A stretch of 63,984 bases of DNA, the filler included, from Hyphochytrium catenoides (Eukaryota > Protista > Hyphochytriomycota), in the NCBI GenBank assembly GCA_900088475.1. It is 11 parts of 11 records of this genome, joined end to end, with 100 filler letters (N's around TTAATTAATTAA, not from the genome) between each part and the next. Parts side by side here need not be neighbours in the genome. Positions count along the whole stretch, not along the records: positions 1 to 28,402 come from FLMG01000561.1; 10 more parts are not named here. One strand, written 5' to 3'. A model generated the notes under the pieces. That model saw only the letters and a program-made list of their open reading frames with translations. It ran no database searches and was not told the origin of the DNA. The position numbers and the translations under genes are program-made. Positions 1 through 21,949 of this stretch are shown here, one piece after another (the first letter of the stretch is position 1; each line of letters starts with the position of its first letter).

Positions 1-339
1 CCCAAATGGTGCGCACAAAGTGTTCGCAGACGAGATTGCAGGTTCTGTCGGTGGCTGTTCGGTCGCAAGTCGAAAGACGAATCTTTGTCCGTTATCACCG
101 GCATCACACAATCCGCTAGACAGAGGGCTGACGATGTGTGAGGCCTTCAGCTAAAATGATGGGGTAGAGGGCCAGAGTATACGAGACAGAGAGATGACAA
201 AATAGGAGGTAACTACTTTGGGGAGAGGGAGCGCAGTGGCAACTGTACAGTTCATTCTTTCGAGTCCAGGAGGAAGACTGAAGAGGAAGCAACAACGAGT
301 TTGTTTTTATAATAATTTGGTACTTGTATCAGCAGTTCT

Positions 340-586
340 TTCTTTCTCTTCTCTCTCTCTCTCTCACACATTCTCTCTCTCTCTTCCCTCTCTCTCCCTC
401 TCTCTCTCTTTCTCTCTCATTCTCTATCTTCCCTCTCTCTCTCTCTCTCTCTCTCTCCCTCTCTCACACATTCTCTATCTTCCCTCTCTCTCTCCTCCCT
501 CTCTTCTCTCTCGCCTGTCGCTCCCTCTCTCTCTCCTCCCTCTCTTCCCTCTCTCTGTCTCTGTCTCTCCCTCTCCCTCTCCCTCT
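340..586. repeat. (CT)n/(GA)n microsatellite; representative of many tracts (e.g. 9120-9350, 19980-20120, 36684-36804, 40780-40984, 54940-55040, 61810-62150)
   Basis: Long imperfect CT/GA dinucleotide runs; many N gaps start or end in them. Confidence 0.95.
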
Positions 587-1167: not shown

Positions 1168-3809
1168 CTAGGCTCTGAGAAGTCTAACCCTTCTCTTGGG
1201 GGGAGCTGCCGCAGAAGTAGAAGGCACGCCGCTGTAGACTGTGACATCTGTAAATCTGAAGACCCCTGTCACTCCTGGACGCGTCAACAAGTGGAGGTTC
1301 ATACTCTTCGGAACCTTACATGGCTCATTGACTGTGAGACTAACTCCTGTCCAGCCGTACGAACCGGTAGGGAACGCCTTGGTTGGCACTGACACAGAAC
1401 CATCCGCCCATGTGACCTCCACATAGAATCCAGCAGTAGCAGCGGGTGATGGAAGAGAAAGGTTATCAGCACTGATGTTTGCTGTGATTGTAAAGACGCC
1501 GCTGCTCACGACATTGCCAAAATCCACTGCCTGGAAAGCTCCTGCTAGATCCCCGCTTTGTCCCTCAACTCTTCCGTAGGTCTTGTTCTGGCCGGTCTCG
1601 TCCTTGCCAAGGGTGTAGCCCTTGCCATCAGACCACCAGTAGGCCATAGTCTCCACCTGAGGGTTTTTGATTAAGGTGGTCGCAGTATAGGTTGGTGGAG
1701 CGGGAGCACTTGCTTCAGTCGTCTTCCACTGGAAGGAAACTCCAAGCTCAATGTTAGCGTTAGGCGCCGCAATAATCCATGTGCGCGTTTCACCAGCGTT
1801 AGCCTCAGGTGTCCTGCCGCNNNNNNNNNNNNNNNNNNNNNNNNNNNNNNNNNNNNNNNNNNNNNNNNNNNNNNNNNNNNGGTGGCAGTGTGGCCGCAAT
1901 TATCTAGCGCCATACGAGCCAAGTAGGCTTCATGCAGGTCCTGCTGCTTAAGAGTCTGCACGGGAAGCTTCAGGTAGCGCATTACTTTCTCCAGCGTCTG
2001 CTCAATCCAGAGCGTTACAAGGCTTTGACGAGAGAACTTGGTAAGGCTGGGCACGCCTGCTGGCGCTGGATGCATGACAAGGTTCGCTTGGTGGGTCATG
2101 TAGGGGTCGTGCTGTAAGGCCAGTAGCTGACTCGCACAGCGCCAGGACTCTCTTTCGTAGAAAGTCTTGAGATCAGTCATGCCTAGAGTCTGATTGTAGA
2201 AGATGTTGTATAGCTGTAGGTTCTTCTCGAAGTCTTGCATATGGAAGTATACGTTTAGTGCGTAGCGTGGGATAATGAACATCCCATCATATCCGTTCCT
2301 CGTGCTGTTGGTTGTCCAGCCGTGATAACGGTTGCCCTTCCAAGGCAGTAGCTGTGAATAGCTGTTGTCTCCAACGATGGACGTGATCCCATGGTCAGCT
2401 AACATCTTCAGGGCGTCTCCATTGAAAAGTCCGCTAATTCTAGGGGTTACCATGGCAGCGGGAGAGTTCCAGGCCTTTCCTTCCAGTCCAAGGATCTTTG
2501 CAAAGTACTCGTTAGCCTTCAGCTCCACATCAGCATCGAACGAGGTAATGTTAAAGAAGGCCAGATGCGTGTAAGTGTGAGTTAGCCAGAAGAACTCCTT
2601 CTGCACATTCTGGTCTCTAGACTTTACGAACAACGGGTCCTTAGCAGCCCATTGAGTAACCTCTGCGGCAGTGAAGTCTGGAAATTTATTTCCGGGAAGC
2701 ATGTCCCATACGCGAGTGCCACTGCCAAGAGGCTTCTGCCATCCAAAGGGAGACTCCTCCAAGTACTGAAGAACTATGGGGTTGTTCCAAGGATCTTGTT
2801 CGCTCCTGGTCTCCTTAGCCACTCCCATGCCATTGTACGCCATCTCTAATTTGACGTTAGAGCCTGCTGGAAGGACTTTGTTCAGCTCTCTTTGCCATTG
2901 TATCAATTCATCTACATCTTTTGGTGAGACTCTGCCCGTTGTCTTTTCATTCAGGTCAGGGTTGGCGTCCCAAAGTTCTGTTGGCAGGAAGTAGTCGTCC
3001 ACCTGAGTGCTTAAGAGTATTCTTCTAGAACCCACGAATAGACCCTTCGTCACCCACTCAGACCAGATGTATGAGAGGGCAACAGAGTTGGAGTCTGGAC
3101 TCCTGGTGGAAACGAAGAGATGCAGTCGCTCCCAGGTATTTGTGCAGTCTTTCTCTACGAGCATGCCCAACAGAGGGGTGCCGGCAGGAGAAGCCTTGTT
3201 CAATACCAGCAAAGGTGTCAGAGAAGGGGATGGAGTCTTGATGTATGAGCCGATGGTGTATACTCCAAACTGGTAAGGCGATTGACTGAGGTCAAATACT
3301 GCTGTGGGCCTAACAATGGAAGAAGGTACCGCCTGCTTCCAAGCGTCAGTGAGAGTGGCAGAGGTTCCAGCCGGTGGTAACCCATTTGACGTGAAACCAT
3401 CTAAGTGGGCCAAGCCAGGGACAGCGTCCGGGTTGGACTCTAATACGACTCTTCGCACCCCGTATTTGACTTCGTAAGCTTGCAGAGCTGCGTACTGGCT
3501 GGCAGTCATCGCATCGACCCAATAGTCCCCCCCTTGGTCGTAGGACGTTGGGCCCTTAACAATGCACGAGTATTTGCCGTGTCCTTCCCCCTGCTCCAGC
3601 TGGAGGTCTCCTTGAAGACCACTCGGAGGGATGATAATCTCATCGAACGGGATAGATGCACTTTGGAATGTTCTTCCGGCATCGCTATTTGCATTTGCGA
3701 ACGCTTCATTGACAATAACAGCGCATTTTAGATCAACCTGAAGCGCCGCAGCGAGCTCGGCAACCGCCGCCAATGCCGCAGCAAGAGCAGCAAACCTGAG
3801 CCCTGTCAT
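1168..3809 (-). CDS. agd3: Secreted Agd3-like polysaccharide (galactosaminogalactan-type) deacetylase: signal peptide + CBM87-like domain + CE18 catalytic domain + extra C-terminal CBM-like domain; interrupted by an N gap at 1821-1880
   Basis: Hydrophobic N-terminus MTGLRFAALAAALAAVAELAAA. Agd3-type motifs: SIPFDEIIIP..., QYAALQAYEVKYGVR, LSTQVDDYFL, FWLTHTYTH, TPRISGLFNGDAL, IIPRYALNVY, HDPYMTHQANL, YLARMALDNC. ORF 1671..3809 and ORF 1168..1899 join across the estimated-size gap; stop at 1168. No introns needed in the sequenced part. Confidence 0.85.
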
Positions 3810-6779: not shown

Positions 6780-7278
6780 ATTATGTTTGCTCGATAAGAA
6801 GATTCCGATATCTGTGAACCCGAACACTCCTGTTACTCCTGGACGACTCGAGATATGCAGGTACTCTACAGGGCTCACTTACCATGAGACTAACCTCTCT
6901 CCAGCCGTAGGAGCCTGTAGGGAAAGCCTTAGCCTGATGGGTCATATAGGGGTCGTACTGTAAGGCCAGTAGCTGGTTAGCCACCGCCAAGACTCTCGCT
7001 TATATTTTCTTGAGGTCAGTCACACCAACGTTGCGTTGTAGAAGGAATTGTGCAGCTGCAGGTTCGTCTCAAAGTCCTGCATGTGGAAGTAGATATTCAG
7101 CCGCCCATAGTGCGGGATAATAAACAACCCATCATATCCGTTCCTGGTGCTATTGGTCGTCCAGCGGTGATAGCGGTTCCCCTTTCAAGGCAGCAGCAGC
7201 CTGATAAGTGTTATCGTCTGAGGAGGGCGTCTCCATTTAAAAATCCGCTGATCACAGATGTAACCATCGCTGCCAGAG
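6780..7278 (-). pseudogene. Decayed, internally deleted tandem paralog of the Agd3-like gene
   Basis: Direct nucleotide similarity to the intact copy: 7222 gagggcgtctccatttaaaaatccgct ~ 2410 agggcgtctccattgaaaagtccgct; 6935-6975 ~ 2086-2130; 6805-6930 ~ 1243-1380. It translates as QLLALQYDPYMTHQA fused to KAFPTGSYGW, with indels elsewhere. Confidence 0.85.
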
Positions 7279-9123
7279 TTGTTGCCCCAACAAGCCTGGC
7301 AGGCTAGCTCTCAATTCTGAGTGATCGGTGGTGATGTTTATCGTCGAGCTTCGTCGTCGTCATCTATTGACCAGCTAAAGGACATTGATTGTTGACACTT
7401 TATTATTGAAGAGACAGGAGAAGAGAGAGTCTAACGACATAGCAAAATATAACGTACAGTATGTACCGAGCAGGAGAAAGGCATGAGGCGTTGTCAAACG
7501 AGGAAGAAGAGACTTAAGGCTATCATACGGCAGATAGAAGAAGAGGAGACAGCAGCAGGACCATGATGAAGTCGCCTACTACTGTTTCTGCTGCTCGCTC
7601 AACTATTATGGTCGTCCACGAAAAGGGTGGTGAAGAAGGGTGAAGAAGGTGGATCTCGTTGTTGGAGCAACACCGTGCTGGGAGGCAGAAATTGCCAGCG
7701 CGAAGCACTTATTGTTGAAGTGGCCCATTCTTCTTCCTCCTATCTACTATCATGGGTGGTATCGTTGCTTCAGCCCACCGACTTGATGATAAAAATAAGA
7801 GCGGTCCACAGTTGTTGTCGTCTTTTTATGCAGAGAATGTGACGGAGCAAAGAAGTAGTAGCAAGGGACATGAATGAAGTGATGGTGTTGGTGAGGAGGA
7901 AGAAGGAGGTCATCATCATGATCGCTACTGACTTTGCTCCCCGCAGCACGCACAACAAGAAGATGTAACAAGGTGGCCTCCTTTCTCTTTTTTGTCCTTC
8001 CTTTGTTCGTCACCCACATGTGTTTCTGTTGACTGCCCTTTTTTACTTATGACTAAGGAGGATGGAAAGCCATCATTAGTCCGCGGACCACTCTACGGGA
8101 AGGCCCTAGCTGCTCAACTGTAGTAAACTTAGAGAGGAAGAGCTTCATGATCAGTAAGTATGATAGTTATTATAGCAGTAGTCATCCTCGTGGTAGGAGG
8201 AGGAAGGAAGAAGGAACTTCTTGTTGTTGACAGCATTGGTGGACGAGAATAACACCATCCGATGACGCTCTCCTTTTCCTAGAATGAACCATTCTCTCGG
8301 TTCTCATGGTCGTCCTTTCCTGGAATGAACATTATGCAGTAAAATTCATCATCATGATGTGACGCACCGCCGGTGCCAGCTGCTCCTCCAGACTGAGGAG
8401 GAGGTGGAGGCGACAACAACAAACGACGAATTGTTTGTTTATTGGGCGGATGATGGCGGACGTAGCGAGCGTACCGTAGGCAGTCGTCGAACGAACCTGG
8501 CTCCCTCTTCATCTCGTCGCTAACCAAGAAGAAGAAAGAAGCATCATCCATCAACAATCAGCACCACTACTACTACTGCTGCTGCTGATGCCTCCTCCTC
8601 CACCTCCAGGTGGTGCTTGTCGCTGCTGCTGCTGCTGGCGGCGGAGCGGGGCTGCCGCTGCTGCTGCTGCTGCTTGCGCTGCTATGCACATGATTGCTGA
8701 TGTTGATGATGAGATGATGGGTGACTTCCGTCATCTGACCGTTAGCGTCTCCCCTTCCAGAAGAACATCTCTTCCATCTCCAACAGAGAAAGGAGGTCAA
8801 GAACAAGATGGCAGCCTATCGCTCAGGTTCCCCTAACTTTGTCAAGGGAACAGTTACATTTAGAAGCCGCCTGAAATTTATCTGACTCTAAGGGAAACTA
8901 TCCCCATCTTTCATTTACATCCAGATTGCCTAGAAGCCTACCCCGGCAGATTCCCATTTAGTCTCTACCAAAAGGGCCTAAAGGCCAGTTCTAATGTTGA
9001 AGTTCCAAAACGAAGGGTCAACCTCCTCCTCCCTCAGTAGTGAGAGTGGCAGACAGGGAAGGGAGGGGAAGCAGCTGGAATAGGAAGAGAAAGCAGAGAG
9101 GGAGAGAGAACCATAACCAGACG

Positions 9124-9181
<58 letters not shown>

Positions 9182-9580
9182 AGAAAGAGAGAGAGAGAGA
9201 AAAGTAAGAGAGAGAGAGAGTGAGAGGGAACAAAGAGAGAGAGAGAGAGAGAGGGAAGAAAGAGAGAGAGAGAGAAGAAACAGAGAGAGAGAGAGAGAAA
9301 GAGAGAAAAAAAAGAAAGAGAGAGAGAGAACGGGGAAGAGAAAGAGGGAGAAACTAGTCCAGCTGTAGATAAGTGGGGCGAGGACTCAGACGGGACTCCA
9401 GACTATCCTCGGAGCTTGGAAGCAGTCGCCATCGAGGTCTTCAGATCTCTGAACTCCATCCATAAAAGGCTTGCAGCTCCAAGTCTCTCAGATCGTGTCG
9501 TTTCGGCAAAGTTCCGCTTTTCAATCTGTCCACCTAAAGCCTCGTGCCCAAGTAAGGCCAGCTCCAAAGCCAGCACCACC

Positions 9581-12500
9581 ATGGGAGATTTCTGGAAGAA
9601 GGTGAACGCCTTCTTTGGCTCTGAGCTTGAGGAGACAGCGGAAGAGAAAATCCAGAAGGAGGCTCGGCGGCAGCAAAGAAAGATGTCATGTGAGATTGAG
9701 AGAAGGAAGCTGTTGGATGAGCTTCAGGAAAGCTTGGTCCAGGTCATGGCCCTGGTGTCAGAAGAGAGCAGGAGGGCGGAGACCCAAGGAGCTACCATGG
9801 TACTCCTCGCTTCTTATCCTTACGCATGCCCGTATTGCGATCTTCTGACATTCCTGACTCTCGGAATCACTCTCTCGACCTCTCTCTCTCTCACATAGCT
9901 TTCTCCACTCACTCTTCCAACGTCGTGTTCGCATCATGCTGGTCGCCTTCCTAGCACTCCGACATTCACATAGTTCTGCCTTGACTAAGCCACCTTGGTT
10001 CGTATGTTTAGGAAAGCACCGATGATAAAAAGTCTCTCCTGCTAAACGATGATATAGCGGCTGTGACTGCTCTTTGTTCATCAATCGATCGCTGCTGCTC
10101 TCATGGCCTGAAAGCTGTGGAAGGAGAAGAGAACTGCTATGTAAAGTTCTATGGGCTTCTTAAATGGACATGCTCCAGAATTCAGATGATCAACTTGCAT
10201 TACCCAGGAGCGGAAGATCCTACAGGTTAACAGCGGCACGGCATTCGTCTCTTCCACATTGATTCCCTGCGCTCTCCCTCTCTCACTCACAAGGGAGATA
10301 GTCCGACTTAGATCTGTCCACCCAAGTTCATGGTCGTCCCGCTCTGGCTGAGTAAGCCTTCTGTTCTATGTCAATACGCCTGGATGTTGCTTCCTTGGCG
10401 CTCACTAGTTTGACCTGCACACTGTCATTTTGACTCTGCTAGCTCTGGATGATGCCAAGTCTGCTAGAGTCATGGCGACGTCTGCGGTGCCTGGCGCTTC
10501 AGAGCTCGGGCGAGAGATCCGCGGCTTCGTGACTGCCATTAGGACCGTCAACTCGCTATCCAACGTTCACCTGGACGAAGGAAGAGCCAGAGCCTTCATT
10601 AGACAGGTCAGTTAGCGATGTCGACGTCTGCCAGGTGGAGGGAAAAAATGCTGTGGCACCCTGGGATGCTGAAAGCAGAGGCTATGTCGGAATAGCGATA
10701 AATTCGCAGAGAGTGGCAGTGCGTGTCGAACGTAGGACACTGTATGAGAAGGCTAGAAGAGGTTAGGGCAAACCAAGACGGAAAGATTTACCTTCTCTCC
10801 CCAGGCGCTGAACACCCATATCCTGCTACGAGTCCTGCAGTATGTCGCTGATCCCCGCAATCGCGATCTCCTTCAGACTTACTACACAGAGTTCGCCCTT
10901 ATGAGGGAGGAGGTAACCTACAGCAACGCATGGCCTAGATCTTCTCTCCCTCTTACGCTTTAACCTCTTTGAATTCCTAATTAGGAATGTACCGCGGATA
11001 TGATCAAGATGCTCACAGGTACTCTTCACCTTATCTGTCAAGAATGAGCTGCAGAGACCCATTCCCTTGCTAAGTCTTAGATGCTTCTAAATAATTTCTC
11101 CCTTCTGACATTCACCTCATGCTTGTAGGCTTGGACGGACTCAACTTCGCATTCCTCATCAACGACCCTCGTCTTGATAAACCTCCTGAGACTCTCCCCT
11201 TCTCGAAACCCCTACCGCGTCTTCTTCCCAAGAGAGTTCAGAAGCCTAAACTGGAGCTGATTGACCCAGACGATATGGTAGAGGGTAGAGTCCGGCTCTG
11301 TGAGGAGGTACACTATTTACAAGCCTCAAGACTCACAGGAACTGTTTTATCGTGTTTCGCTCCCTTCGCTTTGTTAAAGGCACAAGTTCTTCTTGTCCCT
11401 TCGTTCATTGCTCACTGATAGGCCTCTTTTGAAAACTCTCTCAATCGATATGTACCTAGGATGAGAGTGTCGATCTTCTGGCGGAGAAACTCGTGAGTCA
11501 CCGTCATTTGGGAGAAAAGTTTGACAAAAAGGAAGGAGGCAACCCATTGGCAGATCTGCTCAAGCTCAAGTCCGCATCGGACATGGTGGGCGATGCAGCC
11601 AATGCTGTCATGAAGTTTATGGAACTCGGATCACCAGTAAGCTCGTTTTGCTTCTCCTTTTCTGAGATTTGGCCTTCTCTAGGACGGAACCCTCTTGGCC
11701 TATCTTATTCTCACCTCAACTCCAGTGTGGTTGGTTCTTAGCTCGCAACCTTAGCCTCTATCCGCTCAACTGTGTACACTATCACGATTACCTCCCTGAG
11801 AAACAGGAGAGCGTCCAGTGGTTGTTCCGCTTCTTCGGTTCCCTTAATCACACCCTCGCGGGCTCTTACGTCACAGTTGCTAAGAGACTCCATACGTTCA
11901 TTTACTCTGGTTCATAGGAGTATGAGGTTTTTGGATCTCCATTAGCCAAGGTAGTCTGCAACCCTTTCCTCTGTGGACTGGCCCGCTTTGACCCTGCCAT
12001 GGGGGTACCCGACATCGCTGAGGCTTGCATCTCCTATCTTCATAGAAAACTATCCACGCCTGGGCTATTTCAGGTAATAGTTTCAGTTTCCTACTGTTTG
12101 GCTCTCTTGGCATAGCTCAGGGCCGCCCTAGAGCAGGGCCGCCCTAGAGCAATGGTAACAGTACCAGCACTTCTCCATGGTCCAATATCCCCGGCTCATC
12201 AGTCTAATCGGCCTCACTTTAAACTAGGTGCATTTATCGTCTGAGCATATCATTGACCTTCGCGATGCGATTGAAGAGATTGGAGGCTTCCACAAACAGA
12301 TGGCAATAGATCCACACGAAGTTGTCTCTGTCCTACTGCAGTTCTTATGGGAGCTTCCGGATCCACTTTTTACAGACGAGAGGTAACGGGTGGAGAGGAT
12401 TAGGAGAGAGATAACGTGCTGCCGCTGAAGAGACACAATTCCAGGCCTGCTTAAGTCCAATTCTCCCTATGTCAAACGTAGACTCCTTCAAGCTGAAGCA

Positions 12501-15500
12501 CCTGCTTCATGTTCGGTTCATCCTGTTAGCGGTTGTGCAATGTTCGAGGTTGCTGACCTAACTACATTTGTTCAACTCTCGCACGCTTGCTCGCTCGAAT
12601 GTAAAGGATGGAGAGTTTCTTGCAATGCGCCAGAACCGAAGATAGAGATGAGCGAAAGCGTTCTCTGAGCTTTCTTATCAATGACCTGCCTTGGACTCAT
12701 AAGCCCCTTATGGAGAAGCTTTTCCATCTATTAGCCAGGTAAATCCCACAGCCAAGTCGCTCTTTCCTCCACCTAACTACTCTTTAAGAATCATTCGTTT
12801 CATTTCCTCACTTTGCTTCCGCAGTCCTTCCTCTTGACTTGTCCTACCAAGATTGCAGGATTCAGTTGGTGTATCTACCTGTATCTGACTATCACACCAT
12901 CGTTCATACTCCAATAGGGCACTTCAGCCAGAACTCTCACAGAAAAGCGGTGTCACCGTCGACCACCTGGCTTCCATGCTCGCCCCTGTAGTTCTTAGAC
13001 CCAAGCGGATGTTCCACTACAATGAGTTCGATGACCCATCTCTCAGGAGGTAAGCCGCAAAAAGGCTAGATAGAGCCGATTGCTCCTCTTTGTCTCGTGG
13101 CTACAACTCCCTCCTTGTCCGTTCTCTTGTTTACTAAGTGCTTTACCGTGTCCCTCTCTGGCTGCATACCCGTATTCCTTCGTCCCTCTCTTTTCGTTCC
13201 CCATTTCTCCATACCTCAAGAACTCGAAGAGCTATTCTTAAGAGGTTATTTGACTCTTTAGGTTCCCTGTCGCTGGGAATGGCCCCATCAGAGAGAGACT
13301 GAGAGCAGAGATGGCTAGAGCCCACCGAGGAGGATACGGTACTCCCCTACTCCTCAATTTCCCTCCTCTTGTCATCCGTTGTTCTGGTCTATACCTTCAC
13401 TGTTCTCTTTCTTTGTTCACTAAGCTTCAGATGTTTATCTGTCTATCTCTTACGCCGGAACAAACTGTGTCCCCATCCGTAAAAAATGATATCATGTCTT
13501 CCATAGGTTACGATGCTGATCGGTTATATTCAGAGGTCCGTTCATTGAGGGCCAACCAGCGCCAGGTGGAAATGGGTGCAAAGCTAGTAAAGGCAGTCCT
13601 TCTGGACCAAGCAGAGGTACGGGAAGCACACAATAACAGAAGCAGGAGAGAATGCATACGGAGGAAAGAGTAGAGGTGGCAGGTTACGCAGCTAGGAGGA
13701 ACTTCCTAGAAATTGGAAGGCAACATTGCTGCTAGCATAAGGTCCTGGTGTTGCATGATCCCTTACCTCGGTGTGTCGAATGACTCCACAACGGCATTGG
13801 GGCCGTCCTAATCTGACATTCTCATACTTGGTTTCTCTGCTTCTCTGTCTTTCCTCTGCTTCTTCGGGACTGCAGATCTTCGCTGACTTCCGAGTTGAGC
13901 TTGAAAAGCGTCGGAAACTTCTGGAGCTAAAGGTCAACCGCCTGGAACTCATTCCAGAAGATCAAAGCAAATCAATAGATCTCAGCGATGCCGAGGTAGG
14001 TTCGAGGTCTAGGCTTGGATTGTGGACACAGGAAGCAAGAGTCTCCAAAGCGCATGGAGCCATACGTAGGCAGGCAGTAAGCAAAATAGGGAGATGGAGA
14101 ATAGAGGAAAAGCAAAAACAGAGAGAGCAACGGACAAGACAGAGAGTGTTGAGAAACAGGAGACATCCTGTAAAGTGATTGTCATAGACTGACCTTCACA
14201 CTTGGGCACTCGTCTAGCACGTTTCGCTTTTGAAGCAGCTCTGGGACCTCTTGCTTCAGCCAGGAGAGAGTGAGGCGGACGCAGAATTGAAGGAGGCAGA
14301 TTATCTCGCAGAAAGCCAGCTGGCACTCCTTATCAACGCTGCGACCTCACTTCAGGGTATAGGCCTTTGTTAATGTTGTAGCTACATTGGCTTGACGGCT
14401 TAACCTATTCCGTAACAGATGGTCAGCAGCCTTCTCCATCAGATGTGGGTCTGATTCTTCGGAGCCGGAGGTGGAAGACGAGCGGGTGGCACACGGAGGA
14501 TCCCATGGGAGGCTTTCGAGGAGGGGGACTTCTATCTCTTAAGGTAAGACCTCTTTTCTGCTGTGAGGATATGGGGGAAGTGGGACGTGCTTGAGGGCAG
14601 TAAACTGCTGCAGTGGCCGAGTCAAGTAAGAGGAGGATCTCACCAAGTTGATATTTTCATAGTGCATGGTCTACTTCCTCCGGGAGTATCCTGAGAAGGC
14701 AAAACAGATGATGCAGCGCAACGCCGTACCTGGAGGCACGCGCTACCCATTCCCTGTCGCTGCCATCAATGTGATGAGGATGCTCTCCAAGTTGCTGCTG
14801 CTCGACCAAGTAATGTCACTAGTACCATCTCCTGTACCATCTCTTTTTCATCTCTGTCATCCTTGATTTTCGAGCCTACAAATGTTCCTGAATCCTCCGC
14901 TCATGGAAGTTGCTTAACAATCCATCAGCGCACCGAAGCCTTGACAATCCACTCGCTCAATCTTCATCTCTTTTTTAAGTGTGCTGGCCTACGCGCAGTT
15001 GCTTGAGAAATATCGCTAAATTTACATCTACTTCCCCAGAACCCTAGCTCCCCAGCTTCGCGTCTGCTGCTTCATAGTGAAGGCGGATCTTCCGTTATTC
15101 TCGAGCTCCGTGCAGCAGAGGCAGCGTCCCGCGCACCGTTCTGGCGGCTTCTTGATGACTCCGCAGCTTTTGAAAAGCTGTTTTGCATGGCTTTTATGAT
15201 CCTGGATCTACATTGGGTGAGTCACACCTCTTCCGAGTCTATGCTAATCCCAAAGAAGGAAGACGATTTGTTTCTTGTTTAGCGCAGCCCTTGGTGTCTA
15301 AGCTAATCTTACGTTGCCGTCATGGCCAATTCGACGAATATGCAGGTCCAGAGTGGGGCCACACAGATGGGTTTTGCTCCAGTTTTGGACTCGACTCGGC
15401 GGCAGTTGGGTTGGCTGTTGGAGAGATGCCCAAAGACAGTCGATGAGTGCTGGGAGGATTGGATGAAGGTAGGACAAATGCCTTCTCCTCCTCCATGCTC

Positions 15501-16233
15501 TTATCTTCTCTCTGTCTAGGGCACTTCTTACGTTTGTCTCTCTCTGATGGACTCACAGTCTCGTTGAAGTGTCTTTCTTTCTTACACCTCATTCTTATAC
15601 TCAGCAAACTTTGGCCATGTCATCATAAAAAATAACGTCATGAGGCTATGAACTTCTGTTTGAGCCACAATTTTCTCCCTGCGGCGGCCGAGTCTTCTCA
15701 CTTCCACTGCTATTGCATGTGTCCCACCTCCCTGACCTTTCCTTTTCTCTCAAGTCCATAAAGAAATTCTCTTCATGGTCCTAAGCTTGCGGAACTCTTT
15801 CAGCTTGCTGCTGCTGCTTCCTCCTAATCCACCGCTATCTTCTTCCCTTAACCCTCTTTAACTGCTATCAGGTGCGAGAAAGGGCTCTCAGCGGTGGTCA
15901 GCTGTCCGCTGAGGTGTTGAAAGGGAAGCCAAAGACTCTAGAGCCAGCGGCCATTGACGAAGACTTGTTAGCAACTGTTCTCCAACAAAGGTCTCAAGAA
16001 GAGCTTGAGCGAGACGAAAAGAACCAAGAGGAAGATCTACAGGCTGAGGACCTCACACGTAAGAGAGTGCTAGTAGTAGAAGGCCCACGTTGATTGCGGA
16101 CCAATAGCTAACTCCCTTCCCGGTTCTTTTTGGCTATCTAGCCGTGGCAGACAAGGTCTCTGGAGGACCATTGGCCTCAGATGGCAGCTTCATCATCGAC
16201 GGCACCCTAAGAGTAGCCGCCGCAAGCTCATAG
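9581..16233 (+). CDS. Multi-exon RUN + RhoGAP-like + ELMO/CED-12 domain protein
   Basis: ATG in caccATGG context at 9581. RUN: ALCSSIDRCCSHGLK, EGRARAFIRQALN, YYTEFALM, GLDGLNFAF. RhoGAP: VFGSPL..GVPDIAEACISYL..PGLFQ, DPHEVVSVLLQFLWELPDPLFT, HLASMLAPVVLRP. ELMO: WKTSGWHTEDPMGGFRGGGLLSL, YPFPVAAINV, FEKLFC, GATQMGF. GT-AG boundaries keep frame where checked; stop TAG at 16231-16233. Confidence 0.8.
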
Positions 16234-16790
16234 TCAGCTTCACCTTTGAGATCCATGTCGAGACCAGCCACCGCCCTCCTTGCCTTTCCCCTCCATTATT
16301 GTCCGTCTGTCTACATTTTTCCATAGCTGGCAAGCTCCAGCTCCATAGCAGTTCTATCCTATCGATTGCCATTGGCCAAGAGTGACACATGGCTGTCAGT
16401 AAATAAAATCTGTTGGTGCTCCCAGCGCTGATATTCCAATTGTTAGCGACATGAAGGATATGTTTGAGCCTCTTGCTGAACGTAAATTTCTCTCTTTACT
16501 CCTCTCCCTAAGCGCACGTTACCGATTCTTTGGTCTGCTGTGCTCCCTTTATTGACATGCTAGTATTCTGGTCATCTGATGCCCCGTTCACATTCTGCCT
16601 CCTATGAAAAGAGGGATCGTTTGATCCATAATGACAAGAAGGAGCAGCGCTGACAGTTGATGGCATTGGTCTCTATCACAATAAATATCAAAAGTTATCT
16701 TGTCTCTTCTCCCGTCTACGATATCTCCTCCCCACAGTTCCAATGGCTGTACACCTCTCTCTCTCTCTCCCTACTCCGCTAGCTCCCTTT

Positions 16791-19427
16791 CTAACCCATC
16801 GCAGCTCGATTCTCCATCACTTGCACCTGAGTCTGCTTACAGACAGAAAGCAGGCGAGAGAGCTGTGTTCTTGGGCTAACAGCAGCAACCTGCTTATCAA
16901 TCACAGGCTCTCCTCTCCATGGCTCCCTCCTTCTACCTAATTCCTCTCTTCTTGGCTTCTTTGCCTCTACAATCGCCCCGGGAAAGGCTCTGTAAGGTGT
17001 CCTAAGAAAGACTTGCGAGTCGACCTTATAGGAAAAGTGAGAGGGCGAGAGATTGATGGACGGCGGAATGATAAGTGAAGGAGGCGTAGGAGAGAGGTTG
17101 AAGCCATTGTACGGGGATAGAGCTGTTTCGTCTTCATCAGAAATAGGAGAGTGACCTATAGGAGAGGAAAAGAGCTTAACTCCTTCCTTCTCCTGCTCTC
17201 TTTTCTTAGACGACGACGAGGACGACTGTTGAGCTTCCCTGGCACTGTTTCTCTCTTCTATCGCCACATTTGCCAGAGTGGAAAGATGTCCCATGATCTT
17301 CAGGCTGTCCTGGTCTATTGACCTCCGAGCAAGTCCATCAAATACACAGATTGCTCCAATTATCTCTCCATTCCTCTTTCCCGAAATGTCTTCTACCAGG
17401 TGAGTTCCCGCTAGGAACCGGATAGAGTAAGGTGGCCGTGAGAGACCTGAAGATCTTGTCCTCTTGTCTTGGAGAGTATCAAAAATGATGACCCCCTGTC
17501 CATCCGCACCTTCTCTCTCACTCCCTGCGCTTGCTCCGCGAGCCTCTCTCCCTCTTCCAGCTCTGATAATAGAACCAAGCATCTCTCGCACTAAGGCTTT
17601 AAAGGCTCTGTCTTCCTGCCACTGTTCTCCCGCTAGTGGCGTCTGACCCTGCTTTCCTGCTTTGATCCATAGCTCAGACAGCTCTGGCTGAGCCCAAACT
17701 GACTCATTCCCGAGGGAGACTCTACCAAGAGAAGAAGGCCGAAGAAGAAGAACTGCCGCAAAGTCACAGTGCAAGACTTCAGCTGCCAGGTCACAGAGGA
17801 GCTCGTAGATGTGCTCCTTCTTCTGCGTTTTCCTCCGATCTTTTCTCTCTCGGAAAACATCGGCAAGTGCAGTATCGACCAGAGTGGAGGGTGTCGCGTT
17901 CTTCTTCTCCCCATACCCACTTTGTCGTCGCGCTCTTTGGCTTGCGCTGTTGAAAGCGTGTCCGCTCTGATTGTCGCTATCTTCAGTTTTCTCCGGGATC
18001 GTTTGAGGCCCGCCAGCGCGGCTTGTAGCTGTGGCAAGGGAATGACCTATTCTTCCTCCCATAGAGTAGAGTCTCTCATCTTTCTTCGAACTTCCTTGAT
18101 ACTGCAGAGACACCGATCTCCAACCTCTTCGTCTGTCTCTCTTGCGATCTGCACCGTCTAAATCTCCTTCCTCCCGCTGAGTACAGCGAAGGCAGAGACG
18201 AAAGGGAGATGGGGACATTTTTGGCGGGACAATGGCTTCCAGGAACCTGGAGCACTTGGCGCAGATCACTTCTCCACATATTCTGCAGTGGTGCTTCCTT
18301 CTCAGAGAAGAGAACTTCCTGAGGCAGAGGTAGCAGCAAATCCTTTCTCCATCACTTACCCAGGCGGAGGGAGATGACAGTCTCTCACTGACTCTTCCAA
18401 TGCGAAGTGCACTCTGGAGGCAACCCATGGCACTTGCAAGGGTAGAAAGGCCCTCAGACTGCACTCCTGCCAAATGCGTGCCTTCTACTGTCCCCACAAA
18501 GTCTACCCTGATGATCCTCTTCTTGTTCTCCTCTCTACCCTGGGGTGAATCTACGGTGTCATAGACAAAGTAACCGCTCTTCTTCAGGTCTAGTCTTGCT
18601 TGTCCGGCCCCTCTTCTTCCCGGTACTCCTAGAACATCAATAGGACCGTCCAACGATTGCACGATCCTCACAGCTGACAGCCAGTAAGGTGCGTCCTTAA
18701 GATGTGCAAGTACGCTTTGCATGTAGTCTGGGGGAGGAAAGCGGAGAGTGTACTCTAGCGTGGCCAGCTCATAAGTCCCTCCTCTGCCTTGGAAGAGATT
18801 ATAATAGATACCAACACTCTCTTCTCTGTCCGTCAGCCTCTCGTGGACCGCCTCTTCTCTATGAACCAAATTGGGACTTCTGCCGAGTGTCAGATCTCTT
18901 AGAAGAGTCCCATACACGTGGCTGCTGCCGTACAAAGCTTTCATTCTCAGGTTTAGCTCCTCAGAGGTGTTTGGGCCGAGGAATTGGATCACTTCCTCAG
19001 CAGAGAATGCGGAAAGAGAGGTTGAGGCCTTGAGACAACCTGCCTTGTAACGCCTTTGTCCTGGTTCTTTGACCTGCAATTGCCATAATGTATGATGAGA
19101 GTGAATTTTGTTTAAGGCCCAATGATTGTTAGCGTTGTGATATTCTTGTTCCTGGACAAATGCCATCGCGAGCCTTCTCGCGCCTTGTAGCAGAGTTTCA
19201 TCCGAGTCTAGCGTACTCAGCAATGAGCCCGAGCCATCGTCGCCAAGCCCTGACCTTGGAATGGAGGGATTATTGGGGGACGACGATCCGTGCCTAGAAG
19301 CCGTGTCTGGATTCGGCTTGAGTTGGCTTGGCGAGAAGAGAGTTAGGTTAACTCTCGTTGGCCCTGTCATTGTTAGATCAAAGCTACCGCAGCCAGCGGA
19401 TTGAGTCCTAGCTGGTTGATCTTGCAA
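16791..19427 (-). CDS. Single-exon FYVE zinc finger + GAF domain protein (possible START-like N-terminal region)
   Basis: 878-aa ORF. FYVE signature WVSD..CYLCLRKFSSLRRKHHCRICGEVICAKCS..RLCLRC. GAF-type segment IIFDTLQDKR..PPYSIRFLAGTHL..IIGAICVFD. The exact start is uncertain (TTG at 19427 or a downstream ATG, MTGPT). Confidence 0.85.
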   Translation of the reverse strand: MQDQPARTQSAGCGSFDLTMTGPTRVNLTLFSPSQLKPNPDTASRHGSSSPNNPSIPRSGLGDDGSGSLLSTLDSDETLLQGARRLAMAFVQEQEYHNANNHWALNKIHSHHTLWQLQVKEPGQRRYKAGCLKASTSLSAFSAEEVIQFLGPNTSEELNLRMKALYGSSHVYGTLLRDLTLGRSPNLVHREEAVHERLTDREESVGIYYNLFQGRGGTYELATLEYTLRFPPPDYMQSVLAHLKDAPYWLSAVRIVQSLDGPIDVLGVPGRRGAGQARLDLKKSGYFVYDTVDSPQGREENKKRIIRVDFVGTVEGTHLAGVQSEGLSTLASAMGCLQSALRIGRVSERLSSPSAWVSDGERICCYLCLRKFSSLRRKHHCRICGEVICAKCSRFLEAIVPPKMSPSPFRLCLRCTQREEGDLDGADRKRDRRRGWRSVSLQYQGSSKKDERLYSMGGRIGHSLATATSRAGGPQTIPEKTEDSDNQSGHAFNSASQRARRQSGYGEKKNATPSTLVDTALADVFRERKDRRKTQKKEHIYELLCDLAAEVLHCDFAAVLLLRPSSLGRVSLGNESVWAQPELSELWIKAGKQGQTPLAGEQWQEDRAFKALVREMLGSIIRAGRGREARGASAGSEREGADGQGVIIFDTLQDKRTRSSGLSRPPYSIRFLAGTHLVEDISGKRNGEIIGAICVFDGLARRSIDQDSLKIMGHLSTLANVAIEERNSAREAQQSSSSSSKKREQEKEGVKLFSSPIGHSPISDEDETALSPYNGFNLSPTPPSLIIPPSINLSPSHFSYKVDSQVFLRTPYRAFPGAIVEAKKPRREELGRRREPWRGEPVIDKQVAAVSPRTQLSRLLSVCKQTQVQVMENRAAMG

Positions 19428-20018: not shown

Positions 20019-20078
<60 letters not shown>

Positions 20079-21949
20079 CAGAGGCAGAGAGGACCACAGA
20101 GAGAGAGAGAGAGAGAAAGAAGAGAAGAGTTTTATTCGGGCTGGAGAGTTAGTAACAGAGCACGAGAGAAAGAGCTGGAACAGAGATATAAAAGCGATAG
20201 CTTATTGCGTTATCATTGCCGAGACAGAGCAAAAAGGAGATGGCAATAATGCTATAACTGCTTGAGAAGCATGAGTCTAGGCGGCGAAACCTCAGGTCAT
20301 AGCAGTTGTGGAAAGGCATTCTTTTCGGTCTAGTATCAGGTAGGTATCGCATCATTTAGCCCTTTCCTTATAGTAATACGGATTATGTTTAGGTAAAGAG
20401 GCTTCCATTAAAATGCTGTAAAAGTGTTGCTCCATGGCGGTCACGGTAAGCAGAAGAAGAGTGGACGAATGTATCCGTGGACTTTGTGAGTGATGGAGGA
20501 ATAGGATAGAGTTCCGTCTTGTTGTGCCGCCATACTCGAAGCAAATTTGGTACTCTTTATTCTGAACCCTCATTAACAATGCTGCGTTCATTCGGAATCC
20601 CTGATATTGAGGTTTAGGATGCAGCAAAAAGCCGTTACAGTGTGATGATGCAATGCCGCAGGGAGAGAACGAGAGAGAGAGAGAGGGGGAGAGAGAGAGA
20701 GAGANNNNNNNNNNNNNNNNNNNNNNNNNNNNNNNNNAGAGAGAGAGAGAGAGGCACGGAGAGGGGAGAGGAAGGGAGAGAAGAGACAATGAGCACTGTG
20801 AAGCGACGGTCTGAAAGGGCAGAAGTTCTGAATGTTCGCAGCCTCTTTTCCTGTCACCAAGCAGTTCATCCCTCGTCCTGCCCTCTCCGTCACTGCCAGC
20901 CTCCTTCCTCCTGTGGCCCTTGTCGGCCTGTCTTCATCTGCCCTTAACCGCCACCCTAGGGAAGTCGAGGGTTGTACGGGGCGTGGGGGGACCAAGAAAT
21001 GGCAACAGACAGGAAAGAGATGGAAGAGGTGTGAAAAGAATCTGGCTGTTGAGGGAGGAAAGGGACAGTTTTTAGAGAAAAGTACTTTTGAGCCAGCGAG
21101 GTGTCCTCTCACCTTTCTTCAGCATCACCTGATGTCATAGGGTAGTTGATGGGCCAGTTGCTGACCGTCTACCCAGATGATCTAGTAAAGAGTATCGGCA
21201 GCAGATTGAAGTCAGTACCTTGATCAGTACTCGACTGTGCGTCTCCAACGACGACTCTCCTCTCCCACGGAAAGGTTTGTTTCCTTTTTATAAAGTGCCT
21301 TGACATCCTTGCCTTGACAGTCAGAGGCGAAAGCCATCCATGTTGTTACCGGCCGCCGCGGAGGATTCACTCGACAACCGACAAGAAACAAGGTTTTGGA
21401 AACTGCAGTCTTTTTGAGTTTGAATCTGTGCTGATGGTTTGTCCTAACCTGCCTAGTAGAGCGTTTCTCTTTTCAGTTGGTCGTCTCTGACCAGTGGCAT
21501 AGAGGTCTTCTCCCTGCTTGCACGCACTCAATAAGTGGATCAGAGCGTCTTGATGCCTGTGCAAGTAATTGATAATCCAAATGTATGTACTACCGAGGGC
21601 AGTGTGCGACTTCGCACCATGGCCAGATGGTAACGGAACAAGTAAAATTATCTTGTGCGGCATTGAATGTAGTATACGACCATGGACTGTTAAGGCGAAT
21701 GTTACCATCTCGATGGGCAGTGTGGTCGGGAAACCGCTATCGCCATCCAGGAGGCACAGAAGGTAAAGGGCTGACTCCAATTTTGAGAGTCGCAGCCTCC
21801 CAGCATCCTTGTCCTCGGTTCAGAATGAAGAGATCAGCCAGTTTAGGGGGAGGTTGAACAATGCTCGTCTTCCAGGTACTCCACTAGCGAGCCCATTAAC
21901 TGTCCGCTCTCTACTTCAGTGTCATAAGAAGCATATATATCGTATGACA

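What the first reader, a model, noticed from the sequence alone, without database searches (positions are those of the whole stretch)
1168..3809. Secreted Agd3/CE18 exopolysaccharide deacetylase in an apparently non-fungal, intron-rich genome, without its fungal GAG cluster
Seen: a signal peptide, a CBM87-like N-terminal region and all CE18 catalytic/metal motifs (QVDD, HTYTH, PRY, MTHQ) intact, with no introns although neighbouring housekeeping genes carry about 20. Established: Aspergillus Agd3 deacetylates alpha-1,4-GalNAc in galactosaminogalactan, making it cationic and adhesive, and lies in a cluster with gtb3, ega3, sph3 and uge3. None of these are recognisable in this window, although the gene sits near the window edge. 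Inference: the host looks like a stramenopile/protist, so this may mark an undescribed GAG/Pel-like cationic adhesive or wall polymer pathway, possibly acquired horizontally, or an enzyme acting on the polymer of another organism.
Basis: partly seen in the sequence, partly recalled or inferred. Interest (0 to 1): 0.8.

Follow-up and report, generated by a model that had tools for sequence, protein, structure and literature searches.

The report
Agd3-type sugar deacetylase in protist
An intron-rich eukaryote of unknown identity carries an apparently intact, intronless gene for a secreted Agd3-type (CE18) polysaccharide deacetylase; it is a real and divergent member of a known enzyme family that public data already show in several non-fungal protists.

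Summary
On the minus strand, 3809..1881 encodes 643 residues: a signal-peptide-like start, a CBM87 module and a CE18 (Agd3) deacetylase domain. All four catalytic motifs are intact and there are no introns.

An assembly gap (1821-1880) interrupts the gene. The 216 residues after it (1818..1171) align with the C-terminus of the closest homologue, so both pieces belong to one gene. About 31-34 codons are hidden, and the frame across the gap cannot be read.

The C-terminal part looks like an extra CBM4_9-like beta module that A. fumigatus Agd3 lacks.

The gene is resident, not a contaminant:
- It is contiguous with intron-split ELMO and RhoGAP genes.
- Its codon usage matches a neighbouring gene.
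- The same DNA runs hold it and its neighbours.
- A decayed partial copy lies 3 kb away.

No Gtb3, Uge3, Ega3 or Sph3 homologue is in the 28.4 kb piece. Chytrid homologues also lack such a cluster.

In a tree the protein pairs with one environmental contig (57% identity). It falls in the fungal plus Corallochytrium half but outside the fungal clade.

Homologues also exist in Corallochytrium, Amoebidium and Pygsuia, and one hit shares a sequence cluster with an MMETSP (marine-protist) transcript. I could not identify the host.

Verdict: a new member of a known kind, of moderate interest.

The parts
3741..3809 (-). Start codon and signal-peptide-like N-terminus (about residues 1-23: short basic start, then an Ala/Leu-rich hydrophobic stretch)
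   Evidence: This is the first start codon after an upstream stop. In the AF2 model residues 2-16 form a lone helix with low pLDDT. No signal-peptide predictor was available, so secretion is inferred.
3090..3737 (-). CBM87-like carbohydrate-binding module (about residues 25-240)
   Evidence: Pfam PF25116 at 4.8e-14, 53.1 bits against a cut-off of 27.6, matching residues 38-137 only. The whole region superposes on 6nwz in the fold search (627 aligned columns, TM 0.83).
1887..3014 (-). CE18 / Agd3 deacetylase domain (residues 266-641) with motifs QVDD (2994-3005), HTYTH (2565-2579), PRY (2262-2270) and MTHQ (2088-2099)
   Evidence: Pfam PF25115 at 5e-80. PDB 6nwz at E 1.1e-53. Residue conservation in a 38-sequence alignment. 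Fold match.
1821..1880 (.). Assembly gap inside the gene, not flanked by simple repeats. It probably hides about 31-34 codons, which is where an Agd3_C-type domain would lie.
   Evidence: Searches show the gap. Searches align both flanks to P0007 (N-piece ends at P0007 residue 259; C-piece starts at about residue 291).
1168..1818 (-). C-terminal piece of the same gene (216 residues plus stop at 1168-1170). It holds a Thr/Ser/Ala/Pro linker, an all-beta CBM4_9-like module (about 1219-1686), and a short tail ending in a VRLLR-type motif shared with L001.
   Evidence: 39% identity to P0007 residues 324-500, E 5e-31; alignment. ESM Atlas features score 0.97 to CBM_4_9 clusters. The AF2 model is all-beta but poor, pLDDT 47. 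No Pfam or PDB sequence hit.
6798..7273 (-). Decayed partial copy of the same gene. It has in-frame stops and frame changes, PRY is changed to PHY, and an internal deletion joins the MTHQ motif region directly to the C-terminal module.
   Evidence: tblastn and blastn of the gene against the window give 74% amino-acid and 71-78% DNA identity. One short ORF there matches Agd3_CE in the Pfam scan.

Best explanation
The locus is one resident, intronless gene of an intron-rich eukaryote.

Product: a secreted, metal-dependent polysaccharide de-N-acetylase of family CE18 (Agd3 type). The domain order is signal peptide, CBM87, CE18 catalytic domain, a short region hidden by the assembly gap, a Thr/Ser/Pro-rich linker, and an extra CBM4_9-like beta module.

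Inferred mechanism, by analogy with Agd3:
- Asp272, His411 and His415 would hold the metal.
- Asp271 would act as the base and His573 as the acid.
- The enzyme would strip acetyl groups from an alpha-1,4-GalNAc-rich (GAG- or Pel-like) extracellular polymer and so make it cationic and adhesive.

Shown: the fold and the residues. Inferred: the substrate, and whether the polymer is the organism's own.

Evolution: the gene belongs to the eukaryote-dominated branch of the family that also holds the fungal and Corallochytrium enzymes. It lies outside the fungal clade and has been in this genome long enough to take on local codon usage and to leave a decayed duplicate.
For: - Family and fold: Pfam hits, PDB sequence hit, AF2 model with pLDDT 88.8 and TM 0.83 to 6nwz, and conserved catalytic residues. 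Their roles follow Bamford et al. 2020 (PMC7229062: D377 base, H668 acid, R613 and M666 essential).
- One gene across the gap: one search aligns the downstream piece to the C-terminus of P0007. One search places the two flanks. The decayed copy carries parts of both pieces.
- Residency: there is no N between 1881 and 20704, so the gene is contiguous with the ELMO, RhoGAP and FYVE-GAF genes.
- Residency: RSCU r = 0.72 with the FYVE gene, against 0.32 with the closest homologue.
- Residency: the same three DNA runs, from two samples, hold the gene (0.82-0.87 of words) and the neighbours (0.59-0.84).
- Phylogeny: a careful tree gives a 99/98 split that puts the query with fungi and Corallochytrium. 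A 99/98 fungal clade (which also holds P0008 and unnamed metagenome rows) excludes the query. The query pairs with L001 at 100/100.
- Expression: four soil metatranscriptome runs hold 15-21% of the gene's words.
Against: - The gap hides about 30 codons, so an inactivating lesion there cannot be excluded.
- Substrate specificity is inferred at only 26-33% identity to the characterised enzyme, and the fold is also shared with heparan-sulfate N-deacetylases.
- No synthase, epimerase or hydrolase partner is in the piece.
- The CBM4_9 assignment rests on language-model features and a poor model only. Pfam finds nothing there.
- No signal-peptide predictor was run.
- No RNA run of the organism itself was shown to hold the gene.
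Confidence: 0.75

Rival explanations
1. The enzyme is secreted to act on another organism's polymer, such as fungal GAG or bacterial Pel in soil biofilms. That would be part of feeding, antagonism or parasitism rather than maturation of a self-made polymer.
For: - No biosynthetic partner gene is in 28.4 kb.
- An extra C-terminal carbohydrate-binding-like module is typical of secreted polysaccharide-degrading enzymes.
- Near-identical fragments occur in soil metatranscriptomes, where such substrates abound.
Against: - A deacetylase alone degrades nothing.
- Chytrid homologues also lack clustering, so missing neighbours say little.
- Only 1.1 kb of left flank is available.
Confidence: 0.2
2. It is a CE18-fold deacetylase whose substrate is not an alpha-1,4-GalNAc polymer. 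Candidates are a GlcNAc-containing (chitin- or heparosan-like) glycan or another wall polymer.
For: - Only 26% identity to Agd3 in the structural alignment.
- Human NDST1, a GlcNAc N-deacetylase, is the next-best fold match (E 4e-21).
- The query branch is long and separate from the characterised enzymes.
Against: - All four Agd3 motifs, including CM3 Arg and CM4 Met-x-His, are kept.
- The substrate-aligning CBM87 is present.
- The CE18 enzymes discussed in the papers I found (Agd3; Pel deacetylases by their abstracts) act on GalNAc polymers.
Confidence: 0.2
3. The gene is a recent horizontal acquisition or an assembly contaminant from a fungus or bacterium.
For: - It is intronless among intron-split neighbours.
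- Its nearest named relatives are chytrid fungi.
- It sits 1.1 kb from the scaffold edge, with a gap inside it.
Against: - No hit exceeds 59% identity among 1.84 billion representatives, and no named hit exceeds 37%.
- Codon usage and GC match the neighbour.
- It is physically contiguous with intron-bearing genes.
- The same runs from two samples hold both the gene and its neighbours.
- A decayed duplicate lies nearby.
- The neighbouring FYVE-GAF ORF is also intronless.
Confidence: 0.05
4. The gene is itself a pseudogene, with a disabling lesion hidden in the 1821-1880 gap.
For: The two readable pieces are out of frame at the nominal gap length. A decayed copy nearby shows that this family does decay in this genome.
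Against: - Both readable pieces (643 and 216 codons) are free of stops and keep every catalytic residue.
- The gap length is only an estimate.
- The about 31-34 codons missing by comparison with L001 fit a gap somewhat longer than 60 nt.
- Soil RNA runs hold parts of the gene.
Confidence: 0.07

Closest known systems
Aspergillus fumigatus Agd3 (PDB 6nwz), founding member of CE18 and CBM87
   Same: Same CBM87 plus CE18 two-domain core. All four catalytic motifs are kept. The predicted fold superposes at TM 0.83. Both have a secretory-type N-terminus.
   Different: - Only about 26-31% identical.
- No Ser-rich N-terminal region.
- An extra CBM4_9-like C-terminal module.
- The Agd3_C region cannot be read because of the gap.
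- Not next to gtb3, uge3, sph3 or ega3 in the available 28 kb.
- Host genome is intron-rich and unidentified.
L001, a Logan contig from run SRR12417984 (proteins P0001 and P0007)
   Same: Closest relative, at 55-59% identity. Same architecture, including the linker, the C-terminal beta module and the VR(L/V)LR tail.
   Different: Very different composition (GC3 0.85-0.89 against 0.53-0.58). It is read as two overlapping ORFs, which suggests a frameshift or assembly error. Source organism unknown.
Chytrid and Corallochytrium Agd3 homologues (Gonapodya, Cladochytrium, Nowakowskiella, Phlyctochytrium, Rhizophlyctis; Corallochytrium P0036 and P0027)
   Same: Same half of the family tree (99/98 split). 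Where context could be seen (Gonapodya, Cladochytrium) the genes are likewise unclustered.
   Different: Only 29-37% identical. The fungal sequences form their own 99/98 clade that excludes the query. Grouping with Corallochytrium P0036 and P0053 is only moderate (93/66).
Bacterial Pel deacetylases (PelA, B. cereus PelA_DA) and human NDST1 N-deacetylase domain
   Same: Related deacetylase fold. NDST1 is the second-best PDB fold match and PelA the seventh. All are polysaccharide de-N-acetylases.
   Different: Much lower similarity (TM 0.25-0.55, 10-16% identity) and different accessory domains.

Membership tests
CE18 (Agd3-type carbohydrate esterase) | Match to the Agd3_CE profile above the curated threshold | tested here: met
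   PF25115 at 269.7 bits against a cut-off of 27.6, covering profile positions 1-364 of 366.
CE18 (Agd3-type carbohydrate esterase) | Catalytic motifs CM1-CM4: Asp-Asp (base and metal ligand), His-x3-His (metal ligands), Arg of CM3, Met-x-His of CM4 (acid) | tested here: met
   QVDD, HTYTH, PRY and MTHQ are read in the sequence. H411, H415, R515 and H573 are invariant, and D271, D272 and M571 nearly invariant, in 38 homologues. Roles follow PMC7229062.
CE18 (Agd3-type carbohydrate esterase) | Agd3-like three-dimensional fold | tested here: met
   The AF2 model (pLDDT 88.8, pTM 0.90) matches 6nwz at E 1.9e-47, TM 0.83/0.80 over 627 columns. This is a predicted model, not a solved structure.
CE18 (Agd3-type carbohydrate esterase) | Metal-dependent de-N-acetylation of alpha-1,4-GalNAc polymer | not testable with these tools
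   Needs recombinant enzyme and substrate.
CBM87 | N-terminal Agd3 CBM87 module preceding the catalytic domain | tested here: met
   PF25116 at 53.1 bits against a cut-off of 27.6, but covering only profile positions 12-111 of 214. The rest of the module aligns structurally to 6nwz. Conservation of its binding aromatics was not checked.
Agd3 three-domain architecture | C-terminal Agd3_C beta domain after the catalytic domain | tested here: inconclusive
   The position where it would lie falls in the 1821-1880 gap. No PF25117 match in the readable C-piece or in P0007 residues 250-532.
Fungal GAG biosynthetic gene cluster | Adjacency to a Gtb3-type GT4 synthase, Uge3 epimerase, Sph3 (GH135) and Ega3 (GH114) | tested here: not met
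   The Podospora control locus shows the cluster. tblastx of it against the window matches only the Agd3 gene. Pfam scans of the window's ORFs find none of these families. Only 1.1 kb is available on the left side.
CBM4_9 (C-terminal module) | Match to the CBM_4_9 profile or a confident jelly-roll model | tested here: inconclusive
   No Pfam hit at E up to 1 and no PDB sequence hit. ESM Atlas features score 0.97 with 184 of 256 shared to CBM_4_9 clusters. The AF2 model is all-beta with pLDDT 47.

The most novel reading that the evidence does not exclude
The host is a non-fungal protist that makes its own cationic poly-galactosamine wall or adhesive through an unclustered GAG-like pathway, and this gene is its deacetylase.

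A galactosamine wall of this kind was reported for spores and spherules of the slime mould Physarum. I know that work from the title of McCormick et al. 1970, seen, and otherwise from memory. From memory too, the GH135 'spherulin 4' family is named after a Physarum protein.

If true, the GAG/Pel type of polymer chemistry would be an old eukaryotic wall-building module rather than a fungal speciality.
Probability: 0.2. Interest if true: 0.65.

Novelty: new member of a known kind. Interest (0 to 1): 0.38.

Why it matters
Agd3-type deacetylation turns a neutral GalNAc polymer into a sticky cationic one. In Aspergillus this underlies biofilm formation and virulence (PMC7229062). The papers I found treat the enzyme as fungal and bacterial.

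This locus, together with unremarked homologues in Corallochytrium, Amoebidium, Pygsuia and an MMETSP-linked cluster, suggests the family is scattered much more widely among eukaryotes, usually without the ascomycete gene cluster.

If the host proves to be a non-fungal soil protist with GalN in its wall or matrix, this gene is the obvious handle for finding that pathway. On its own, it is a well-supported annotation of a divergent family member.

Tried and rejected
Tools that gave nothing:
- The search of earlier findings was not open.
- The word-indexed protein search found only 4 Agd3 hits, and almost nothing for the FYVE-GAF neighbour. The exhaustive search found 888 Agd3 hits, so the negatives from the word-indexed tool mean little.
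- An exact look-up of the FYVE protein found nothing.
- Metagenome scans found only distant relatives, 29-32% identity.
- Viral-contig scans found nothing.
- Rfam and tRNA scans of the piece were empty.

Host identity:
- Run and organism names are coded, and AlphaFold DB organism names are masked.
- I considered Physarum or another myxomycete. In favour: pyrimidine-rich repeats flanking a gap, a fragmented 454-era assembly, many introns (PMC4758236), and its galactosamine wall.
- I do not adopt it. The evidence is circumstantial, and runs of only 50-102 million letters hold 59-87% of the locus's words. That suggests a far smaller genome than Physarum's 250 Mb, if those runs are shotgun reads.
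- I considered an oomycete because of the FYVE+GAF architecture. I judge it unlikely, because the piece has few long ORFs and its genes have short exons.

Other checks:
- A giant-virus insertion as the origin of the intronless gene was considered, because P0008 lies in a virus-like contig. Nothing virus-like flanks the gene in the window.
- The AF2 model of the C-terminal piece was too poor to use in a fold search.
Full report
**1. What is at the coordinates**

On the minus strand an ORF starts at the first ATG after a stop (3809) and runs 643 codons to the edge of an assembly gap at 1881.
- Pfam gives Agd3_CE at 5e-80 (residues 266-641, nearly the whole profile) and CBM87_Agd3 at 4.8e-14 (residues 38-137).
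- The only solved structure matched by sequence is A. fumigatus Agd3, 6nwz, at E 1.1e-53, collinear over residues 35-640.
- The four CE18 motifs are read directly: QVDD (2994-3005), HTYTH (2565-2579), PRY (2262-2270) and MTHQ (2088-2099).
- In an alignment with 37 homologues, H411, H415, R515 and H573 are invariant, and D271, D272 and M571 nearly so.
- These correspond to the residues that Bamford et al. 2020 showed or proposed to be base, metal ligands, CM3 Arg, CM4 Met and acid (PMC7229062).
- An AF2 model built on that alignment is confident (pLDDT 88.8, pTM 0.90). Its best PDB match is 6nwz (E 1.9e-47, TM 0.83/0.80, 627 columns), followed by human NDST1 and, far behind, PelA.

The N-terminus is a short basic stretch followed by an Ala/Leu-rich hydrophobic segment, as in a signal peptide. 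I had no predictor for this, so secretion is an inference.

**2. The gap**

At the nominal 60 N the two sides are out of frame. The upstream frame then runs into unrelated sequence and stops at 1671, while a different frame is open from the gap to the stop at 1168-1170. The gap length is only an estimate, so this says nothing about the real frame.

The 216 residues downstream align to residues 324-500 of P0007 (39% identity, E 5e-31). P0007 is the C-terminal half of the closest homologue. The upstream piece ends at P0007 residue 259.

The two flanks are therefore collinear parts of one gene, in the right order and on the right strand. About 31-34 codons (roughly 100 nt) are hidden. Whether the hidden part is intact is unknown.

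**3. The C-terminal part**

After a Thr/Ser/Ala/Pro-rich linker comes a module of about 150 residues.
- It has no Pfam or PDB sequence match.
- AF2 predicts it as all-beta, but poorly (pLDDT 47).
- Its language-model features are closest to CBM_4_9 clusters (score 0.97).

I treat 'CBM4_9-like' as a lead only. Among the 153 homologues I compared (the 150 best hits of the exhaustive search plus three from the word-indexed search), this module and a short VR(L/V)LR-type tail are shared only with L001.

**4. Is it resident?**

Four observations say yes.
- There is no N between 1881 and 20704. The catalytic part of the gene is therefore contiguous with the other genes in the piece:
  - a plus-strand ELMO-domain gene, whose exons of about 125-150 nt are separated by GT-AG introns of 118 and 229 nt;
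  - RhoGAP exons and a weak RUN match;
  - an uninterrupted 878-aa FYVE+GAF ORF at 16791-19427.
- GC and codon usage match that neighbour. GC3 is 0.58 against 0.50, and RSCU r = 0.72. Against the closest homologue, whose GC3 is 0.85-0.89, r is only 0.32.
- The same three DNA runs of 'organism A', from two samples (2011 and 2017), hold the gene (0.82-0.87 of sampled words) and the ELMO/FYVE stretch (0.59-0.84).
- A decayed partial copy lies at 6798-7273 on the same strand. It has 74% amino-acid identity, in-frame stops, three frames, PRY changed to PHY, and a deletion joining the MTHQ region directly to the C-terminal module.

Contamination or very recent transfer is therefore unlikely. Four soil metatranscriptome runs from three studies hold 15-21% of the gene's words. 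That suggests transcription by this organism or a near relative in soil.

**5. Relatives and phylogeny**

An exhaustive HMMER search of 1.84 billion representatives gave 888 hits.
- The two best full-architecture matches are P0001 and P0007 (55-59% identity). They are the two halves of one gene on a 4.9 kb Logan contig, L001, from an unknown GC-rich organism.
- Every other listed hit of more than 400 aa is at most 38% identical, and every named one at most 37%.
- Named hits:
  - chytrids: Phlyctochytrium, a Chytridiales sp., Cladochytrium, Gonapodya, Nowakowskiella and Rhizophlyctis;
  - ascomycetes: Dactylellina and Podospora;
  - non-fungal eukaryotes: Corallochytrium, Amoebidium and Pygsuia, plus one hit whose cluster includes an MMETSP transcript;
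  - a bacterium: Anaerolineae.

A careful ML tree of 50 sequences gave the following.
- A 99/98 bipartition separates two halves. One holds the query, L001, both Corallochytrium proteins, P0053, P0008 and all named fungal sequences.
- The other half holds the one named bacterium together with Amoebidium, Pygsuia and the MMETSP-linked cluster. Most of its rows are unnamed.
- Within the first half, the fungal sequences plus P0008 and some unnamed metagenome rows form a 99/98 clade that excludes the query.
- Query and L001 pair at 100/100.
- They join Corallochytrium P0036 and P0053 with only moderate support (93/66).

The tree is unrooted, several branches are long, the bootstrap had not fully settled, and most rows are unlabelled. 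I claim only this: the gene belongs to the fungal plus Corallochytrium branch, is not nested within fungi, and is not close to the bacterium I could name.

**6. The cluster question**

A positive control shows the canonical arrangement. The Podospora homologue sits next to a 2,834-aa GT4 protein, an epimerase and a GH114+Spherulin4 protein. tblastx of that locus against the window matches only the Agd3 gene, and two Pfam sweeps of the window's ORFs found none of these families.

The Gonapodya and Cladochytrium homologues have no such neighbours within 10 kb either. Gonapodya instead has a tandem pair. Missing neighbours are therefore ordinary outside Ascomycota. In addition, only 1.1 kb of left flank exists here.

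**7. The host**

I could not identify it. The piece shows an intron-rich eukaryote with about 49% GC and long (CT)n/(GA)n tracts, one of which flanks a second gap. The FYVE+GAF architecture has ESM Atlas look-alikes only in oomycete clusters. That atlas lists only large clusters, so this is weak evidence.

Sequence searches for the FYVE protein gave nothing close, but that tool is insensitive. A myxomycete such as Physarum was considered and not adopted; see 'tried and rejected'.

**8. Mechanism and rivals**

Best reading (0.75 for gene, family and enzyme class): a secreted CE18 de-N-acetylase that makes a GalNAc-rich extracellular polymer cationic.

Whether the polymer is self-made (about 0.5) or foreign (about 0.2), and whether the sugar is GalNAc at all (a rival at about 0.2), cannot be settled from this piece.

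**9. Novelty**

The family, fold and chemistry are known. Bamford et al. 2020 already report homologues in chytrids and bacteria. Homologues in several non-fungal protists exist in public data, although I found no paper that discusses them.

This is a divergent new member with an unusual C-terminal module, in an unidentified intron-rich host. Interest is moderate.

Noticed in passing
window 6798-7273 (-): A decayed partial duplicate of the Agd3-like gene. It has stops, frameshifts, the catalytic Arg changed to His, and an internal deletion that joins the CM4 region to the C-terminal module.
   Followed up: yes
window 16791-19427 (-): An uninterrupted 878-aa ORF with a FYVE finger (3.5e-14) and a weak GAF match. 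Its ESM Atlas look-alikes are FYVE+GAF clusters recorded almost only from Oomycota. It is intronless like the Agd3 gene.
   Followed up: partly
window 13300-16400 (+): An ELMO/CED-12 domain gene split into short exons with GT-AG introns of 118 and 229 nt. Two RhoGAP-matching short ORFs and a weak RUN match lie elsewhere in the piece; I did not locate them.
   Followed up: partly
window 336-556, 9123-9330, 20024-20129, 20671-20786; gap 20705-20737: Long pure pyrimidine or purine (CT/GA) tracts of 29-82 nt. The second assembly gap is flanked by GA repeats on both sides. The gap inside the Agd3 gene is not flanked by repeats.
   Followed up: partly
L003 (GCA_013565615.1, contig JACCDO010083003.1), genes at 7213-7947 and 8001-10037: An Agd3 homologue (P0008, 34% identity) and an adjacent CBM87-only gene lie in a 28% GC contig. 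Its genes are tightly packed and mostly on one strand. They include YqaJ, an ATP-dependent DNA ligase, a polysaccharide pyruvyl transferase and a cyclin-like protein. This looks like a giant-virus or virus-derived region. Scans of viral contigs found no match.
   Followed up: partly
P0005 (2398 aa, Phlyctochytrium), P0006 (1926 aa, Chytridiales sp.), P0064 (2173 aa, Pygsuia): Very long proteins with 4-5 separate matches to the Agd3 query. They may carry several Agd3-type modules in tandem.
   Followed up: no
L001 858-3654: The closest homologue is read as two overlapping ORFs (858-2075 and 2056-3654). This could be a frameshift, an assembly error or a short intron in an otherwise intact gene. 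GC3 is 0.85-0.89.
   Followed up: partly
L008 5745-13827 (Gonapodya prolifera): Two Agd3 homologues in tandem, with no GT4, GH114 or GH135 neighbour within 10 kb.
   Followed up: no
runs X1-X3: DNA runs of only 50-102 million letters hold 59-87% of the sampled words of two separate stretches of the piece. If they are shotgun reads, this implies a small genome (tens of Mb). That sits oddly with how few recognisable genes the 28 kb contains.
   Followed up: no
fold search of the model in AlphaFold DB clusters: Structural relatives include entries annotated as 'Agd3 deacetylase domain-containing protein' and a 'WSC domain-containing protein'. By my recollection of accession prefixes, some are algal (green and brown). 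Organism names were masked, so this is unverified.
   Followed up: no
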